This document shows, piece by piece, positions 36,645 through 43,700 of a DNA stretch of 64,000 nucleotides (position 1 is its first letter; the number at the start of each line of letters is the position of its first letter). Source of the DNA: Podarcis erhardii. Taxonomy: Eukaryota. Location of the stretch: NCBI GenBank assembly GCA_964252035.1, contig OZ176210.1; one strand, written 5' to 3'. Under the pieces are notes generated by a model that saw only the letters and a list, made by a program, of their open reading frames with translations, made no database searches and was not told where the DNA came from. Position numbers and translations under genes: made by a program.

Positions 36645-36971
36645 CAAAAAACTTTTATTTAGCATTTACACCAACAGTCCAGCAGTTACTTAAACTTTTA
36701 TTTACCTTACAATATTAAGACATTAAACAGCTACAGTGAAAACAAATGCTATTGGCAACTTGCAAATAAAAAGTTGCGTTAACACCTAAAAGTCACCCCT
36801 CAGACGCAGCACAAGGTGGAAGGTGGATTCCTTCTGGATGTTGTAGTTGGAGAGGGTGTGGCCACCTTCCAGCTGCTTCCCGGCAAAGATCAGCCTCTGC
36901 TGGTCAGGGGGAATGCCTTCTTTGTCCTGGATCTTAGCTTTCGCGTTCTCAGTGGTGTCACTGGGTTTAAC
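36645..36971 (-). pseudogene. 5'-truncated processed polyubiquitin retrocopy (last repeat, residues 17-76, plus 3' UTR), probably UBB-derived
   Basis: [61 protein letters not shown]; 8 of 60 residues changed incl. G76D; extra terminal Phe; minus-strand AATAAA at 36654-36659 and 36697-36702. Confidence 0.9.
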
Positions 36972-38417
36972 TGGACTTCCTGACTCTGCTCCGAGCGCCT
37001 GTTCCTCTCCTCCTCCTCCTCCAGGACCATTCAGCACCCACTATTTCACCCCTATTTATTTTTAAGGAACAACTGCAAATGTTAACTCTCGCCAGGTTTA
37101 TGGTAAATCTTTCTTACCAATGCAAAATAATAGTTACAGAAACTGGCTGAGTTTCTTGCTCACTAGGCCAGTCGCAGTTGGTGTAGAATTATGTAATTGT
37201 CCAAGGTTTCAATTCTGTGAAACCTGGCATATTTCTCAGTTGCGAGGAGGTGGCCCAATAAAAATGTCTTCTGTATTATATACGTATCTCATGCCGCTAG
37301 TGCCCACTAGAGTAACAGCAAGGAAAGAGGCACCTATCTTCTTCCAAAACGCTGAAGTTTTTTTGCGCAGTGAAGTGGCACGCAAATTTTGTTAAATTCA
37401 TAAAAAGAAGTGTATTCCTGCCGCCAAGGAGATTGCAATCTAACCTTCAACATGGGGAGGGGGAGAACGTTCTGTTCACTTGCCTGTATCTTCATTAAGG
37501 GATGAGGACTAAGTGGTTGTGCTGAGCCTTCCCTTAACTGATTTCAGGATATTAGCAGATGACCTTAAAGCTATAAAAAGAAAGCTTCTGTATGCAGGCA
37601 AGGCCTTTTCTTCGTCTTCTTTCATCATTTTTCTTGTGAAAATGATAACTGCACACAGACAAATCTATGCCCATACAAAGATGAAGCTGGAACTGGCTTG
37701 TGCCTGCGCCTCTTAGGGAACAGGGCAGAGCTGCTGGCTGCATGCCAAGGAGCACTTTGGGCAGGTAATGGATACGCCAGGATATTGTACTTGAGGGGGA
37801 TAAATAGAGAGGGCTCTGCTGCTAAGACTTCAATTTCGATAAAATTCCGGTCTCCCTGGTGGAAAAGGAAACCATTCTCATAAAGCAAATTTGGGGGGAG
37901 GTGAAGGCATCCTTTACTTGTTGCAAGAGTCAGGGAGACCTTCTTGTTTCACCACTTGGCCCCAGGACCTTCATTCAGTTGGAAGGCTGAAATGGAACAG
38001 CAGGTTATACCGGCATGCTTGCAAAAATAGATTTGTCCTGCTGCACGGGTGCAATTTTGTTGGATTACGTGGCCCAAGCTAGTGTGTGTATGTATGTGTG
38101 TGTGTGAATGTGTGAGTCGCTTTTTTCTCCACTGACTCCGATATCCAGCGTCTCTGTCCCTTCTCTTGACAGCAGCTTCTGATGAGTCTTAATCCTTGGC
38201 CGAGAGAGCCTTGCTGGGCAGGCAGCGAGGGGCAGAGGCCTCTGCCGCTTTGTGGCATGATGAGAGGGCGGCAACATGGCCACTGAGGATGTGCGCCGGC
38301 AGAGGCACCCTAAGGCTAGAAGATGACATTGCTTCTGTGCTTAGAACATCTGCTGTGAAACTCCTAACTGGGCAGCCCTCTCAGAAGCAGAAGGCCCTGC
38401 TGTTTCTGGAGGAGAAG

Positions 38418-40752
38418 ATGAAGAAGCTTCTGCAAGGGCCGGCGAGCGAGCTCTCCCTGAGCCAGAATCACCACCAGCAGCTTTCCCTGGTGGAAATAGA
38501 AACGGACGCCTTTGTCTGTGGCGTCAATAGGAAATCTGCAAGCAGTGACTTTTCCGCTGCTCAGGGGAGGAGCCCTGGAACCAGGGAGGCCAGTAAAGGT
38601 GGGCTGGACTGGGATGGATACATCGAAGCCCCACGGGCGTTAGTTCCAAGCCAGTGTGACTCAGGGTGTATCTCTGGCCGCCTGGCCGCAGAGAGCCTTC
38701 TGGAGCAAATGGAGAGCCCCGAGGGGCAAGCCGATCTCGCTGCCCTGAGCCTTGGCACTGGCTGGAGGGGAGTTGCTGGGGAAAGAGAAGGGGAAGGGCC
38801 CTGCCCTCCAAACAAGCCCCTCGCCTACACTCCTTGCAGCCCTGGGCCCAGAGACCGCTCTGCCGATGTCATTGAGTACATCGTGAAAGAGCTCCAAGGG
38901 ATAAGTCGCATCCAGATCGAGATTGCTGAGCTCCAGCAGCACCTCACCTTGATCAAAGGCTCTGTGGACGAAGTCTCCAGCTGCGTGGACACTGTTCTGA
39001 GTGAGATTGAGGGCCTGCAGAGCAGCTCTGGCCCCACCAGCAAAAACTCCCCATTGCCAAAGGCCAAGGCCAGGGAGCCCCTCCTGGGAGGGCCCATCAG
39101 AGAGCCAGTGTTGTATTTTTATGGCATCCCAGAGCAGGAGGGGGAGAACACCAAGGAGCTAGTCCACCGTTTCTTGTCAGAGTACCACTGTTTCAATGGC
39201 ATTCAGCGTAGCAAGTACATCAAGGATGCTTACAGATCTGGTGCAGCAACAGGCAAGCAGCTGGCCCCACGACCCGCTGTTGTAAAGCTGGCTAACGCTG
39301 AGCAGCGAGACTTCATTCTCCAGAAATCGATTCTTTTGCAAAGTGCAGGAGTTACCATTGTGGCCAGCAGTGAGCAAAGCCAGCAGAATGGCCAGGCGGG
39401 TCCTGGGGCACAGCTGGGCACCTTGCCCTCGCCAGGCCAGAGTGGGAACCACTGGGGCTCCCTGCACATTCGTGGGGAAGTGGTCAGGACGGACGGAGAC
39501 GGGCAGCTCCAAGTGGACTCTTGCCAAAACGCTTGCCAAGAGGCTCACCGCCGCGTAGGGGAAAGGCTTAACTTTCAACCAAAATCCACCCTACCGAGGA
39601 AGAGCCACCTAATTGCTGAACTTGAAGAAAAAGTGGGGAGAGTTGTGCAAATAATGGGCAGTAGTGAGCAGACTTTGTACAAAAGCAGCTCTTCCGCTGG
39701 AGTCCTTGATGCGTCCCACAAGAAGCTGGAAGGCCCTGGGCATGAGAACAAAGGCAGGGATTCCTTGCCATCCCCGGAGTGCTTGGGCAAGGTGCCCGCC
39801 TTGTGTGAGGGAGGAGGGGGACGTGCCTCAGATGCTGAAAATGCCACCAAGGGCAGCTCCTCTCCTGTGGAAGAGGACCAAGCAGGAGGGCTGACTCCTG
39901 GCGAAAGCGAGACGGACTGTGATGCCACCACACTGGAGTTTCTCAGTCCTGAGCAAGTCAGTCTCCTGGAGGAGGCACCGGTGGCCATGACCACTCCCGG
40001 CTGTGACGGTGCTCTGCGCAAATTGGTTGACAGCAGTGAGACGCTCAAAGACATGATCCAGATTGACCTGAACGAGCAAGACCCAACTGATCAGGTCTTC
40101 AGGGATGTCCTAGAAAATTCCCAGTACTTCCTTGAGCACTCTCGGGACAGCATTGATCTCGTGGACATGAGGTTCTACACTAACAAACTGGGCAAAGCGC
40201 TGAATCACTTCCGGTCTGCGCTGCAGGTGGTGTTCCACAAACTGGAGACTGGGGACCCAGAAGTCCTCCTTGAAGGGGAAAAGAGCTTCCATATGAACAA
40301 TGAGCCAGCTCCTGCCCTCCGTAGCCCAAGTGTGCACGGCAGCTTGGATACCTTTGCTGAAACTCCCCCTAGTCAGTCTTCTGAGAGCCAGGCTAACACG
40401 ACTGTGAGCAGTGACAGTGTGGGCCTGATGCAGAGGGCTCTTCCCAGTGCTTCATTGCCTCTTGACAAAGCTCCAGTCCCCGACCTGGTGCCCCCACCGG
40501 ATTCTGAGAGCTGTGTGGAGCAGCCCTTACCCTCTGGAGAGGCCCAGCAGGATCCGGGTTCTGCGCCTGTGCAGCCCAGCGGGTGCCGACCTATGAGCCT
40601 CGAGAAGGTGTGTGCCGAGACCATCTACCTGAACAAGTGCATCAACAACTTCAAGAATGTCCTGAGGGAAAAGAGGCAGATGCGTCGGAGGCTCTTGAAG
40701 GAACTGGCCCAGGAGGCAAGTTGGACTTCCTCGGCTGAAGAGATTCATTCAG
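38418..40752 (+). CDS. UNC13B: bMunc13-2 (brain-type) alternative N-terminal coding exon; exon acceptor at 38172/38175
   Basis: MKKLLQ start, DVIEYIVKELQGISRIQIEIAELQQHL, KLGKALNHFRSALQVVFHKLE and SLEKVCAETIYLNKCINNFKNVLREKR match recalled rat bMunc13-2. Donor TCAG|gtactc, phase 1. An in-frame upstream ATG exists at 38289. Confidence 0.92.
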
Positions 40753-43700
40753 GTACTCCCAAAGTTGTTGAGATTTGCTGGTTAAATGCTTGCTCGTTTT
40801 TTTTCAGAAAGTTTAGCAGCTGCAGGCAGAATGATTAAATAGAAATGGTTTATTGAAGTTTGGTCAGAGATAGCAGATCATAAGAGCCAAAGACAAAAGC
40901 TGCCCTATCTCTGCACCCTTAACAAATGCAAAAAAACACACACAAAACCCCCGTTTCTGGAGGTCTGCCAAATGATTTGTGATGTTCTATCTCCAAGGAA
41001 GCAGACATTGACTTCAGATCTGCTTCTTGGCAAACTGAAAGCATGTTGGGAAAGTGTTTCTAATACCATTAACCTGCTTAGGGGATCCACTTGGAAGCAA
41101 GAGCTTTTCCATGTCTCTTTACTTTCATAGGAAATAGTGAACCAGTAGCCAGTTGCCATTTCCCATATAAATTTGCCAGGGAAGCTGAAATCTGCTGGGA
41201 GATCTCTCCTGAAATGTTTAAATAACCAGCTCCAAGGAAGAGCTCTGCTAGAGCACTGTTTCCCTCCATGTAATAATGCCCCTTGAGAAATCCACATAAG
41301 AGGTGTTCTGTTGGAGTGCAGAATTCATGTGGATCGTACTCTCCATTATGTTTGTCATGTGCCTTATATCAAGAGCCCTCTTCTGTGGAGCTTATATTGA
41401 GAACTGTTCAGATGATAATCAGTTGTGGGGTCCATGTGAGCTGCTTCCTAGCGATCGTAGGCACTTGAGATTCCAATTGGGTTAGGCCTTGTGTTTTACC
41501 TTTGTGGGTTTGTGAAAATCAAACTTCAGAACAGTGGAGCTTGACTTTAGGGAGCAATAAGGAGACTTGAAGGAGAGCAAAGGGAAAGAGCAGAAGCAAA
41601 ATTCATCAGAAGCTTCACCCAGCGAGATTCAGGGAGCTGCTTTGGTCCTTATGTACTACTGAGCTGCAAAAGGACCATGTCTGGGGGTGGGGGGGCACCA
41701 CCTGCTCACTCGCTAAAATAAGCAAAAGATTTGCACATATTTGAAATTGCACCTCTGCACTTAACCCTTGGGTATAGTGGCAAAGGCGCTTTCCGTTTCC
41801 CCCTAAGAAATGCCCCACCTGATTCTAGATCCTCATGTGTGATGCATGTTTTCTGAAATTGCGCCCAAGTGGGCCCACAGTAGCCCCCTCCACCATACTT
41901 GACAGCAGCGCCTGTCTCCAAGGATAAAGATGAGGCTCTCTCTCCCCTCCTCCTTCTGCTGCTGTGTGCAGTATACAAAGACGGAACATCATGCCTAGGA
42001 CAGTTTGACACACTGCCCTGTGTGGGAGAAGGACTTCTCTCAGAACCCTGCAGTCCATGCGCCCAGGCCAGAACCACAGTGGCTTCCCACAGCGGCAACA
42101 TCAAGTCATAGTGTACTCTGCATGCACATCTCCCACGATGCACACATGGAAGGCGCTCAGTGCTTCTGCAGTGCATGAAAGGGCTCTTGATGGTGGGATG
42201 ACAGCAACTCCCACTTTCCCGGAGAAGCCTCATGTCCTTCCCCAATACTTCATCTTTTCCTGCTTAAAGCGGTTTTCCACATACGTTTAACGTGTTCTGT
42301 CGCAGCTGTACTTCGGAAGGAAGAGCACCAAGTTGAACAAGTGTTGGGCTTGGGAGAGCTGAACTCTCATCCTTGCTCCCTCACAGGCTGAAGGCTGCTC
42401 CACACATTGGGGGAACAACCACCTTTTCTTGGATGCTTGAAGGCGAGATGCATGCAAGGAAGACGTGGGAAACTTGCAGGAGCTGGGATTGGCTGCAGTT
42501 CCCACTCTGGGCAGGTTGAAACCTCTTGCCATTTCATTTCTGCCGTTCTAAAAGAGGGTTGTGGGGGATTTCCTCCTCTGCAGGACTAAAGGAAAGCAGC
42601 ACGGCACTTTCAACGCTTTAAATGATTTTCATAAATCATGGGTTGTAAAATTCTCTAGCAGAGTTATGGATAGTGCAGGAGGTTTGAGGCTATAATGAGC
42701 TCAATATTACTATGGAAATAGTGGTTTTTATGAGGCAAGGATCCCGCCACAAAATGGTCCCAGGTAATGATAATTCTAGTAAATTAATATGCCCTAGCCA
42801 TCCATCCATCCTGTGGCCTAGAAAATTTATTCCAGGTCGTTATAAAATCAGCTTATTAGGGTTGGAGGCAGAGAAGTTGTTTCTGCTGAGGGCTGGCAAA
42901 AGTTTGGAGCATTTGCCATCTTCCTTCATAAGAAACTTTGATCTTACTCAGAATAGCTGGTTTCTAAGTAGAGGCAGTTTCTGACTGCAAACCACATTAG
43001 CCTTTTGTTTTCAGGTGACAATTAAGAACAACAATGGAAGCCCTTTGAAATAAATGGCTGACATTGTGGTGCCATTGGGGAGCTTGTGACAAACTATTCA
43101 TTTTCCTAATTTCTTGTTCTTTTGATTTGACAGCAAATATTTCCCAAAATTGAAATGGGAAGAGTTGCTAAAATCTGCTAGATTTATCAAGTAATGCTTC
43201 AGTTCTCTTTAGAAAACAGATGGGAGAAGGATTCATTTCTCCTCCACCTGTTAAATCACTGCTCATGTGTGTTCCTTTTCTGCATGTTTTCGTTAGGGAA
43301 TGGGAGATACAGAATTTGAAACAGGAGAGAGAGAGAGAGAGAGAGAGAATGGGGCAAAGGTGGGTCTGATGTTTCAGACTCCTAGGTCCCCAATTCTTTC
43401 TTTGCTCTTTTATGCCCAAGAAAAACTAGGCGATGTTTACTAAGAAAATGCGCTTTTGTTGTAATGAAGAAGCTTGATTCAGAGCATACCCTGTCAGGTA
43501 TTTTCCTTGGGACAGTTTCAAATGAACTTCTGAGGTGATGGTTGGCTGTGTTTCTGGTATGTCAGCTCTTTGTTTGAAAATTAGATTCTTCTGGCATGGG
43601 CCTCTCTCTCTAGGCATAATCCTAACCCCCTTCCCAATTCTATTTCGCTTTTTGGAAGCCAAGGGTCATCTACTTTTTGGACAATAACTGCCACACGGGC

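What the first reader, a model, noticed from the sequence alone, without database searches (positions are those of the whole stretch)
38865..39362. LINE ORF1p-like coiled coil + RRM module inside the bMunc13-2 exon
Seen: heptad coiled coil (38865-39020), short linker, then VLYFYGIPEQEGENTKELV...IKDAYRSG...APRPAVVKLANAEQRDFILQKSILLQSAGVTI (39108-39362). Known: this matches the L1/Tx1-type ORF1p RRM pattern (NLRxxGxPE..EN, IxRAHR, PRxIIVKF, KExIL) that follows a trimeric coiled coil, and the same segment is present in recalled rat bMunc13-2. Inference: the brain-specific N-terminus arose by exonisation/domestication of a retrotransposon ORF1 before the amniote split, so the ELKS-binding coil may be transposon-derived and may trimerise or bind RNA. 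This would parallel Arc and L1TD1; I know no report.
Basis: partly seen in the sequence, partly recalled or inferred. Interest (0 to 1): 0.87.

Follow-up and report, generated by a model that had tools for sequence, protein, structure and literature searches.

The report
Retrotransposon-derived module in Munc13-2
The brain-type first coding exon of the synaptic vesicle-priming gene UNC13B (Munc13-2) carries a coiled coil plus RNA-recognition-type domain that descends from the ORF1 protein of a LINE retrotransposon; UNC13C has the same module, so it was captured before jawed vertebrates diverged, and the coil is the stretch reported to bind the active-zone protein ELKS1.

Summary
Window 38856-39029 encodes a confident 58-residue helix with an a/d heptad core. 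[quoted passage not shown]

Two fold searches rank human LINE-1 ORF1p first (Foldseek E 3.5e-4; VIA-align Z 10.0, rmsd 2.5 A over 88 residues). A UNC13B+UNC13C profile hits L1 ORF1p in the PDB at E 2.4e-8, against 0.058 for the next family. In 1.84 billion proteins it finds 5630 relatives. All four sampled sit directly upstream of an endonuclease plus reverse-transcriptase ORF2. A UNC13B-only profile against these LINE ORF1 proteins gives hhalign probability 99.4%, E 2e-21.

The same genome's UNC13C exon has the module, and UNC13B+UNC13C group together against the LINE proteins (support 98). A shark UNC13B-type exon has it; ray-finned fish UNC13B kept only the coil. Capture therefore predates the UNC13B/C split.

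Coil and RRM are under purifying selection (dN/dS 0.02-0.12; flanks 0.2-0.4). The ORF1p C-terminal domain is absent and the UNC13B RRM is not basic, so RNA binding is doubtful.

Prior art: Kitao et al. 2025 noted the ORF1-like exon in UNC13C without analysis. I found nothing on UNC13B.

The parts
38289..40752 (+). bMunc13-2-type first coding exon of UNC13B. Candidate start codons are the ATG at 38289 (long form, as in bird, frog and gecko gene models) and the ATG at 38418 (short form MKKLLQ, as in mammalian gene models). The splice donor GT is at 40753-40754.
   Evidence: Open frame 38196-40838. Orthologue N-termini and the ATG at 38418. Donor sequence cag|gtac. Occupancy of the orthologue alignment starts near residue 75-81 and ends near residue 855.
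38856..39029 (+). Coiled coil derived from the ORF1p coiled coil. It is the counterpart of the ELKS1-binding motif of rat bMunc13-2 (residues 145-187).
   Evidence: AF2 helix over residues 7-64, pLDDT 88-98. In-register parallel contacts at a/d positions in the three-chain model, score 0.52 against a best control of 0.01. hhalign aligns it from residue 22 onward to the coil of LINE ORF1 proteins. dN/dS 0.02-0.04. ELKS1 mapping from PMC5379939.
39030..39107 (+). Disordered, poorly conserved linker between coil and RRM. In UNC13C and in LINE ORF1p the helix runs on to the RRM instead.
   Evidence: pLDDT below 50 for residues 64-87. Identity 0.24. dN/dS 0.39-0.85. Comparison with UNC13C.
39108..39362 (+). 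Non-canonical RRM domain of the LINE ORF1p type: b1 39108-39122, a1 39150-39182, b2 39219-39236, b3 39276-39290, a2 39297-39341, b4 39354-39362.
   Evidence: AF2 topology. Foldseek top 12 hits are all human L1 ORF1p. VIA-align 2w7a_B Z 10.0, rmsd 2.5 A over 88 residues. Profile matches. It shares the LINE ORF1p consensus positions L90, F92, G94, E97, E101, I126, R131, G133, P142-R143-P144, V147, K148, R155 and L165. dN/dS 0.09-0.12.
40056..40265 (+). Second conserved island of the exon. It is collinear with an island of the UNC13C exon, which shows that the whole exon, not only the module, is paralogous.
   Evidence: Identity 0.53-0.82. BLASTP second segment 54% over 35 residues, E 2e-6, against the same genome's UNC13C exon.
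40596..40715 (+). Conserved amphipathic basic island near the exon end. Its V-x4-I-x8-F spacing fits the calmodulin-binding site described for rat bMunc13-2 (V709, I714, F723; residues 719-742). It is context only, not part of the ORF1p-derived module.
   Evidence: Identity 0.74-0.93. dN/dS 0.04-0.07. Motif positions from PMC7017353. The assignment by spacing is my inference.

Best explanation
Window 38856-39362 encodes a domesticated fragment of a LINE retrotransposon ORF1 protein: its parallel coiled coil and its non-canonical RRM, without the C-terminal domain. The fragment is built into the alternative first coding exon of UNC13B (the bMunc13-2 isoform). It was captured once, in an ancestor of UNC13B and UNC13C before jawed vertebrates diverged, and has been kept under purifying selection since. 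In ray-finned fish UNC13B only the coil survives. How it works, as inference: the coil has been re-used as a protein-protein docking and oligomerisation helix. In mammals it is the stretch needed for ELKS1 binding, and so for placing bMunc13-2 at a subset of active zones. The RRM now serves as a folded accessory or protein-interaction domain, not as the nucleic-acid chaperone it was in the transposon. What is shown here: the fold, the homology to LINE ORF1p, the paralogy with UNC13C, the selection pattern, the absence of the C-terminal domain and the loss of basic charge. What is inferred: the oligomeric state, the role of the RRM, and the transfer of the rat ELKS1 result to this species.
For: Fold: AF2 gives a helix followed by b-a-b-b-a-b.
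Structure searches: all 12 best Foldseek PDB hits are human L1 ORF1p (best E 3.5e-4, target TM 0.66), ahead of generic RRMs. The Foldseek-independent VIA-align search of 48,161 chains ranks 2w7a_B first at Z 10.0, rmsd 2.5 A over 88 residues, with 2ldy at 8.8 and 2yko at 8.3.
Sequence: the UNC13B+UNC13C profile against PDB sequences gives L1 ORF1p E 2.4e-8, with profile positions 39-162 matching chain residues 4-131 (coil end plus RRM). The next family scores 0.058. The UNC13C module alone gives E 0.004.
Large library: the profile finds 5630 proteins at E<=1e-3 in 1.84 billion, with 200-450-residue proteins matching positions about 22-182 at E 1e-18 to 1e-11. All four whose context I checked lie just upstream, on the same strand, of an ORF2 with Exo_endo_phos plus RVT_1. 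Of 40 such proteins, 14 hit Pfam Transposase_22, the commonest family among them.
UNC13B on its own: the UNC13B-only profile against these LINE proteins gives hhalign probability 99.4%, E 2.3e-21, over 154 columns.
Paralogy: the same genome's UNC13C exon matches at E 1.3e-28, and BLASTP gives 31% over 225 residues plus a collinear second island. In the tree, UNC13B+UNC13C form one side of a branch with support 98. A basking-shark UNC13B-type exon has coil plus RRM, and a bamboo-shark UNC13C-type protein has the module at 71% identity.
Selection.
Function: Kawabe et al. 2017 show that deleting residues 145-187 abolishes ELKS1 binding, and that both positive constructs (1-305 and 70-605) include what I now identify as the RRM.
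Oligomer: the three-chain model scores 0.52, best of 3 controls 0.01. The mark was reached by 21 of 30 proteins solved as pairs of one chain and by 0 of 23 solved as single chains. The runs agree in at least 60% of contacts and partner pLDDT is 61-62. The calibration used two copies, so these counts hold only roughly.
Against: Pfam's Transposase_22 model does not reach any reported score on the window protein, on its 80 orthologues or on the UNC13C module. A search of this genome with PF02994 found nothing.
The UNC13B-only profile reaches only E 0.03 against human L1 ORF1p. The strong statistics come through UNC13C and through non-mammalian LINE ORF1 proteins, which were themselves selected with the UNC13 profile.
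The tree is unrooted and used the quick method, so the direction of transfer rests on distribution, not on the tree.
No ELKS binding, oligomer state or RNA binding has been measured for this species. The three-chain model cannot tell a trimer from a dimer.
Confidence: 0.85

Rival explanations
1. The module still works like ORF1p. It forms trimers that bind single-stranded RNA, so that bMunc13-2 (and Munc13-3) carry or tether RNA at the presynapse, in the way Arc keeps Gag-like behaviour.
For: The coil plus RRM build is preserved and strongly conserved. The three-chain parallel model passes its controls (0.52 against 0.01). The core is rich in beta-branched Ile and Val at both a and d positions, which from established coiled-coil rules favours trimers. 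The invariant Arg of the 'AHR' and 'PRP' motifs is kept. The UNC13C RRM keeps a net positive charge, mean +3.2.
Against: No trace of the ORF1p C-terminal domain in UNC13B or UNC13C exons (best E 0.18 in a set of about 170 sequences). From established knowledge of L1 ORF1p, the RNA cleft is formed by RRM and C-terminal domain together. The UNC13B RRM has mean net charge -1.3 and about 10 Lys+Arg, against +4.7 and 16.6 in LINE ORF1 proteins. The basic pair before strand b1 (consensus R-R) is Glu-Glu in UNC13B. Strand b3 has no aromatic RNP1 residues (read from the sequence).
Confidence: 0.1
2. UNC13B and UNC13C acquired ORF1 fragments independently from related LINEs (recurrent capture), instead of inheriting one capture.
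For: Recurrent ORF1 exonisation is documented for MYL4, RFX5, NUP42 and USP4 (PMC12129022). The UNC13B and UNC13C modules are only about 31-34% identical.
Against: UNC13B+UNC13C form one side of a branch with SH-aLRT support 98 against 45 LINE ORF1 proteins. Both modules sit at the same relative place in the first large coding exon and both lack the C-terminal domain. The exons share a second collinear island outside the module (E 2e-6). The coil is far more alike between UNC13B and UNC13C than either is to any LINE protein.
Confidence: 0.04
3. There is no transposon origin. Either the likeness to ORF1p is convergence on a coil plus RRM build, or LINEs took the module from a host unc-13-like gene.
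For: Pfam's Transposase_22 does not detect the module. The tree is unrooted.
Against: Profile statistics are far beyond convergence: E 2.4e-8 against PDB sequences, 1e-18 in 1.84 billion proteins, and hhalign 2e-21 over 154 columns with the signature motifs in register. The LINE family is large (5630 cluster representatives) and occurs in cnidarians, molluscs and insects. The host module was seen only in jawed-vertebrate UNC13B and UNC13C, and it is a truncated version lacking the C-terminal domain.
Confidence: 0.02

Closest known systems
LINE-1 ORF1p (human; PDB 2w7a, 2ldy, 2ykp, 2yko; Pfam Transposase_22 PF02994)
   Same: A parallel coiled coil followed by a non-canonical RRM. Shared motifs are in register: L-x-F-x-G-x-P-E..E-N, (H/Y)-R-x-G, P-R-P-x-V-V-K-(F/L) and L-(K/Q)-(G/S). 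It is the best structural match in two searches and a significant profile match.
   Different: No C-terminal domain. Not next to an ORF2; instead the exon is spliced to the Munc13 C1/C2/MUN core (Pfam columns). The UNC13B RRM is not basic. A disordered linker interrupts coil and RRM. Below Pfam's cut-off. It lies closer to LINE ORF1 proteins of marine invertebrates than to mammalian L1.
UNC13C (Munc13-3) ORF1p-like canonical exon, noted by Kitao, Ichiyanagi and Nakagawa 2025 (PMC12129022)
   Same: The paralogous exon with the same module in the same position. In this genome it matches at E 1.3e-28, and the two group together in the tree.
   Different: UNC13C is much more conserved (83% reptile to mammal, 71-73% to fish and shark). 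It stays closer to LINE ORF1p: shorter stem branch, positive charge, helix continuous into the RRM, and a D-x-S-x-E-T-like tail. It does not bind ELKS1 (PMC5379939). That paper does not mention UNC13B.
L1TD1 and Lyosin (MYL4 fused to L1 ORF1)
   Same: Host proteins whose coding sequence derives from LINE ORF1 and is kept by purifying selection (abstracts).
   Different: L1TD1 is a stand-alone eutherian gene, and Lyosin is a sauropsid testis isoform. The UNC13B/C capture is shared by sharks and tetrapods, so it is far older, and it sits in a core presynaptic gene.
Arc (Gag-derived synaptic protein)
   Same: A retroelement structural protein re-used in neurons.
   Different: Arc derives from LTR-retrotransposon Gag and still forms capsids that carry RNA. 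Nothing here shows particle formation or RNA binding.

Membership tests
LINE ORF1p of the coiled coil-RRM-CTD type (L1-like; Pfam PF17489/PF02994/PF17490) | Parallel coiled coil directly N-terminal to the RRM | tested here: met
   AF2 helix over residues 7-64. In-register parallel three-chain model, 0.52 against a best control of 0.01. hhalign aligns the coil from residue 22 to the LINE ORF1p coil.
LINE ORF1p of the coiled coil-RRM-CTD type (L1-like; Pfam PF17489/PF02994/PF17490) | RRM fold (b1 a1 b2 b3 a2 b4) closest to the ORF1p RRM | tested here: met
   for topology. Foldseek top 12 are L1 ORF1p. VIA-align Z 10.0, rmsd 2.5 A over 88 residues for 2w7a_B.
LINE ORF1p of the coiled coil-RRM-CTD type (L1-like; Pfam PF17489/PF02994/PF17490) | Statistically significant sequence homology to proven ORF1 proteins | tested here: met
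   E 2.4e-8 to human L1 ORF1p. E 1e-18 to 1e-11 to proteins that lie upstream of APE+RT ORF2s. hhalign 99.4%, E 2.3e-21.
LINE ORF1p of the coiled coil-RRM-CTD type (L1-like; Pfam PF17489/PF02994/PF17490) | Reaches the Pfam Transposase_22 gathering score | tested here: not met
   No PF02994 match even at E<=10 for the window protein, its 80 orthologues or the UNC13C module. Of the bridging LINE proteins, 14 of 40 match it at E<=0.1.
LINE ORF1p of the coiled coil-RRM-CTD type (L1-like; Pfam PF17489/PF02994/PF17490) | C-terminal domain after the RRM | tested here: not met
   A profile of the C-terminal domain of 43 LINE ORF1 proteins finds nothing in UNC13B or UNC13C exons (best E 0.18). The model is disordered after b4.
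LINE ORF1p of the coiled coil-RRM-CTD type (L1-like; Pfam PF17489/PF02994/PF17490) | Encoded in a retroelement, upstream of an endonuclease/reverse-transcriptase ORF2 | tested here: not met
   It is an exon of UNC13B. Longer orthologue models continue into C1, C2 and Munc13-homology domains (Pfam columns). Only two loci in this genome match, UNC13B and UNC13C.
LINE ORF1p of the coiled coil-RRM-CTD type (L1-like; Pfam PF17489/PF02994/PF17490) | Basic RNA-binding surface; binds single-stranded nucleic acid | tested here: inconclusive
   Mean net charge of the RRM is -1.3 in UNC13B, +3.2 in UNC13C and +4.7 in LINE proteins. Binding itself cannot be tested with these tools.
LINE ORF1p of the coiled coil-RRM-CTD type (L1-like; Pfam PF17489/PF02994/PF17490) | Homotrimer | tested here: inconclusive
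   The three-copy model passes its controls, but no two-copy model was run, so trimer and dimer are not told apart.
Host exons domesticated from LINE ORF1 (L1TD1, Lyosin, UNC13C as noted in PMC12129022) | ORF1p-homologous coding sequence inside a host gene, conserved across lineages under purifying selection | tested here: met
   Orthologues from shark to mammals. Conservation islands. dN/dS 0.02-0.12.
Canonical RRM (Pfam RRM_1) | RNP1/RNP2 aromatic motifs on b3/b1 and a Pfam RRM_1 match | tested here: not met
   No RRM_1 hit. Strand b3 reads A-V-V-K-L, without aromatics. Generic RRMs score below ORF1p in the fold searches.

The most novel reading that the evidence does not exclude
The ORF1p-derived N-terminal modules of bMunc13-2 and Munc13-3 still assemble as ORF1p-like trimers that bind RNA. 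Vesicle-priming proteins would then tether or sense RNA at active zones through the oldest known domesticated LINE protein.
Probability: 0.1. Interest if true: 0.9.

Novelty: new member of a known kind. Interest (0 to 1): 0.66.

Why it matters
[quoted passage not shown] Here the two exons prove to be paralogous, and their conserved core proves to be a truncated LINE ORF1 protein.

This gives the ELKS1-docking helix an origin and a structural template, the ORF1p coiled coil. It also reveals a previously unrecognised folded RRM domain next to the helix. That domain was present in every ELKS1-binding construct tested, so it raises concrete experiments: is the RRM needed for ELKS1 binding, targeting or priming, and what does Munc13-3's better-preserved copy bind?

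For transposon biology, this would be a LINE ORF1 domestication shared by sharks and tetrapods. That makes it far older than L1TD1 (eutherian) or Lyosin (sauropsid), and it sits in a core synaptic gene.

Tried and rejected
Searches that found nothing:
- Single-sequence Pfam scans of the exon, the module, the RRM alone, 81 orthologues and the UNC13C module gave no Transposase_22 or RRM hit, only weak coiled-coil noise.
- A single-sequence PDB search with the window module gave only low-complexity and coil noise.
- The Pfam PF02994 search of the window's own genome found nothing. The control genomes are all prokaryotic, so this shows little.
- A profile of the C-terminal domain of LINE ORF1 proteins, run against all UNC13B and UNC13C exon proteins, found no remnant. 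That script printed a profile consensus of an 86-residue fragment as a by-product. I did not use it further and do not repeat it here.
- There is no CpG island upstream of the exon.
- The supplement of PMC12129022 is not held.
- Earlier scan notes held nothing on this feature.

Questions left open:
- LINE clade. The ORF2 of one related element hits R2 and L1 ORF2p about equally in the PDB, so I could not name the clade.
- Cluster look-up of the LINE-like hits gave no names.

Ideas I dropped:
- That teleost UNC13B lacks the module altogether. It keeps the coil, and Amia keeps a remnant of helix a1.
- A recent insertion or annotation artefact, because of deep conservation and because the module has only two loci in this genome.

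Tools not used: I did not use the reads tools. I took none of the fetched loci for human. L008 and L009 are Logan contigs whose exon is about 75% identical in protein to the window, which fits a sauropsid origin.
Full report
**What is at the coordinates.** It lies in an 880-codon open frame, 38196-40838.
- A database search with residues 215-400 of that frame returned 85 proteins. All those that carry a gene name are UNC13B, or are labelled 'UN13C/unc-13 homolog C-like' or 'uncharacterized'. Identity is 76-80% in squamates, about 74% in birds, about 60% in mammals and 56-60% in frogs.
- Longer gene models continue into C1, C2 and Munc13-homology domains. The frame is therefore the bMunc13-2-type alternative first coding exon of UNC13B, in a sauropsid genome that is probably squamate.
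- Candidate start codons are the ATGs at 38289 and 38418. The splice donor is at 40753.

**Fold.** AlphaFold2 with 81 tetrapod sequences gave mean pLDDT 76.
- One helix covers module residues 7-64 (window 38856-39029, pLDDT 88-98).
- A disordered linker follows (39030-39107).
- Foldseek against the PDB put human LINE-1 ORF1p in all twelve top places (best 2w7a, E 3.5e-4, target TM 0.66), followed by generic RRMs.
- A search that does not lean on Foldseek (VIA-align against 48,161 chains) also ranked the L1 ORF1p RRM first: 2w7a_B at Z 10.0, rmsd 2.5 A over 88 of 99 residues, 2ldy at 8.8 and 2yko at 8.3. Ordinary RRMs scored 7-8.5.

**Sequence homology.** Single sequences and Pfam see nothing. 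Profiles do.
- The UNC13B-only profile gave L1 ORF1p E 0.03 against PDB sequences, aligned over the whole RRM.
- The window's own genome holds one paralogous locus, the first large exon of UNC13C (E 1.3e-28). That module alone has L1 ORF1p as its top PDB hit (E 0.004, query 42-181 against chain 3-150).
- A joint UNC13B+UNC13C profile of 89 sequences hits L1 ORF1p at E 2.4e-8, with profile positions 39-162 matching chain residues 4-131 (the end of the coil plus the RRM). The RRM-only entry 2w7a scores 1.2e-6. The best unrelated family scores 0.058.

**Link to real retrotransposons.** I ran the joint profile against 1.84 billion cluster representatives.
- It found 5630 proteins at E<=1e-3 and 182 at E<=1e-10.
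- Behind the UNC13B and UNC13C orthologues come 200-450-residue proteins that match profile positions about 22-182 at E 1e-18 to 1e-11.
- I looked up the context of four of them. Each lies just upstream, on the same strand, of an ORF2 with an apurinic-type endonuclease (Exo_endo_phos) and reverse transcriptase (RVT_1). This is the ORF1 position of a LINE.
- For one of them, the only PDB relatives are L1 ORF1p.
- Of 40 such proteins, 14 hit Pfam Transposase_22 (best E 6e-6), the commonest family among them. They therefore bridge UNC13B/C to the curated L1 ORF1p family.
- A profile-profile comparison of the UNC13B-only alignment with these 40 LINE proteins gives probability 99.4%, E 2.3e-21, over 154 columns running from coil residue 22 to the end of the RRM.
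- Named relatives of these LINE proteins come from octocorals, a sea anemone, oysters, other molluscs and an insect. NCBI's automatic naming calls several of the 265-residue coral proteins 'protein unc-13 homolog C-like'. That is an independent sign of the similarity, and it is a mis-annotation.
- The LINE clade stays unresolved. The ORF2 is about equally distant from R2 and from L1 ORF2p in the PDB.

**History.**
- The UNC13C module is 83% identical between this reptile and mammals, 73% to teleosts and 71% to a shark.
- A basking-shark 776-residue exon of the UNC13B type has both coil and RRM (E 4e-41).
- Teleost and bowfin UNC13B keep only the coil. Bowfin retains a remnant of helix a1, so the RRM was lost in ray-finned fish UNC13B.
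- In a maximum-likelihood tree (quick method, unrooted), the 21 UNC13B and UNC13C modules form one side of a branch with support 98 against 45 LINE ORF1 proteins. UNC13B has support 99 and UNC13C 86. The UNC13B stem branch is long (0.9 against 0.19).
- The two exons of this genome also share a second collinear island outside the module (54% over 35 residues, E 2e-6).
- The simplest reading is one capture before the UNC13B/UNC13C duplication and before jawed vertebrates diverged, with faster change in UNC13B.

**Selection.**
- Along the UNC13B exon, identity to the window across 49 tetrapods is 0.75-0.82 in the coil, 0.62-0.80 in the RRM and 0.15-0.35 in most of the rest. Two further islands lie at residues 621-690 and 801-840.
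- I computed Nei-Gojobori dN/dS against two sauropsid-like contigs. The values are coil 0.02-0.04, RRM 0.09-0.12, and flanks 0.21-0.39, with the short linker at 0.39-0.85.
- dS is saturated, so these values are rough, but the ranking is consistent.

**What was kept and what was lost from ORF1p.**
- Kept: at 20 or so of 32 positions where the LINE proteins have a clear consensus, UNC13B has the same residue. These include the invariant Glu of the P-E..E-N motif, the invariant Arg of (H/Y)-R-x-G, and P-R-P.
- Lost: the C-terminal domain. A profile of it finds nothing in any UNC13B or UNC13C exon.
- Lost: the basic character in UNC13B. Mean net RRM charge is -1.3, against +3.2 in UNC13C and +4.7 in LINE proteins, and the R-R before b1 has become E-E.
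- In L1 ORF1p the RNA cleft needs RRM and C-terminal domain together (established knowledge), so RNA binding by the UNC13B module is doubtful.

**Oligomer.** A three-copy model gave a score of 0.52, against 0.01 for the best of 3 controls.
- The mark was reached by 21 of 30 proteins solved as pairs of one chain and by 0 of 23 solved as single chains.
- The runs agree in at least 60% of contacts, and partner pLDDT is 61-62.
- The calibration used two copies, so these counts hold only roughly.
- The contacts are parallel and in register, at the a/d positions of residues 8-61.
- The model supports self-association through the coil. It does not show it, and it cannot tell a trimer from a dimer.

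**Function, from the literature.**
- Kawabe et al. 2017 (PMC5379939) mapped ELKS1 binding of rat bMunc13-2 to the coiled coil at residues 145-187. Deleting it abolishes binding, active-zone accumulation and normal priming.
- By position in mammalian orthologues (the module starts near residue 132-136), this is the same helix. That equivalence is my inference.
- Both ELKS1-binding constructs (1-305 and 70-605) contain the RRM. The coil was not tested alone, so a contribution of the RRM remains open.
- The Munc13-3 coil is reported as 52% identical and does not bind ELKS1.
- The paper calls the two N-termini otherwise unrelated. The present results show instead that they are paralogous over the coil, the RRM and a further island.

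**Prior art.**
- Kitao, Ichiyanagi and Nakagawa (Genome Res 2025, PMC12129022; preprint 10.1101/2024.04.25.591049) screened RefSeq for ORF1p fusion isoforms. [quoted passage not shown]
- They do not mention UNC13B.
- Full-text searches for Munc13/UNC13 terms together with ORF1, ORF1p, Transposase_22 or L1TD1 found no other relevant paper.
- The kind of thing is therefore known and the paralogue has been flagged. I believe the following are new: the UNC13B case, the single ancient capture, the loss in ray-finned fish, the missing C-terminal domain, the charge loss, and the identity of the ELKS1-binding helix with the ORF1p coil.

**Verdict.** I used no reads tools, I took no fetched locus for human, and I referred no step.

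Noticed in passing
window 36786-37037 (-): An 83-codon open frame whose second half reads like ubiquitin ([32 protein letters not shown]). It is probably a processed ubiquitin pseudogene fragment upstream of the exon.
   Followed up: no
window 40596-40715 (+): The most conserved island of the exon (identity 0.74-0.93). Its V-x4-I-x8-F spacing fits the N-terminally extended calmodulin-binding site described for rat bMunc13-2 (PMC7017353).
   Followed up: partly
window 40056-40265 (+) and L002 (UNC13C exon, residues 771-805): A second island shared by the UNC13B and UNC13C N-terminal exons (54% over 35 residues). It may correspond to the 'predicted' calmodulin site at residues 572-594 of rat bMunc13-2. 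Its function is unknown.
   Followed up: partly
P0321, P0328, P0423: Coral proteins of about 146-267 residues that NCBI and UniRef name 'protein unc-13 homolog C-like' are relatives of LINE ORF1 proteins, not Munc13s. The name was probably passed on from the ORF1p-like region of UNC13C.
   Followed up: partly
P0177: A 446-residue metagenomic protein joins the ORF1p-like coil plus RRM to a C-terminal NADAR domain (E 6e-29). This is an unusual fusion.
   Followed up: no
(protein atlas): By language-model features, the module sits as near to arthropod clusters carrying Baculo_FP_2nd/Baculo_FP (score 0.89-0.90) as to Transposase_22 clusters (0.86-0.88). The baculovirus FP25K second domain may be related to the ORF1p RRM.
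   Followed up: no
P0150-P0162: Several UNC13C gene models match only the first 41-113 residues of the 196-residue query (most of these are Ensembl-derived UniRef entries from birds). Either the RRM part is skipped in annotated isoforms or these are prediction artefacts. Kitao et al. also mention isoforms lacking the exon in three species.
   Followed up: no
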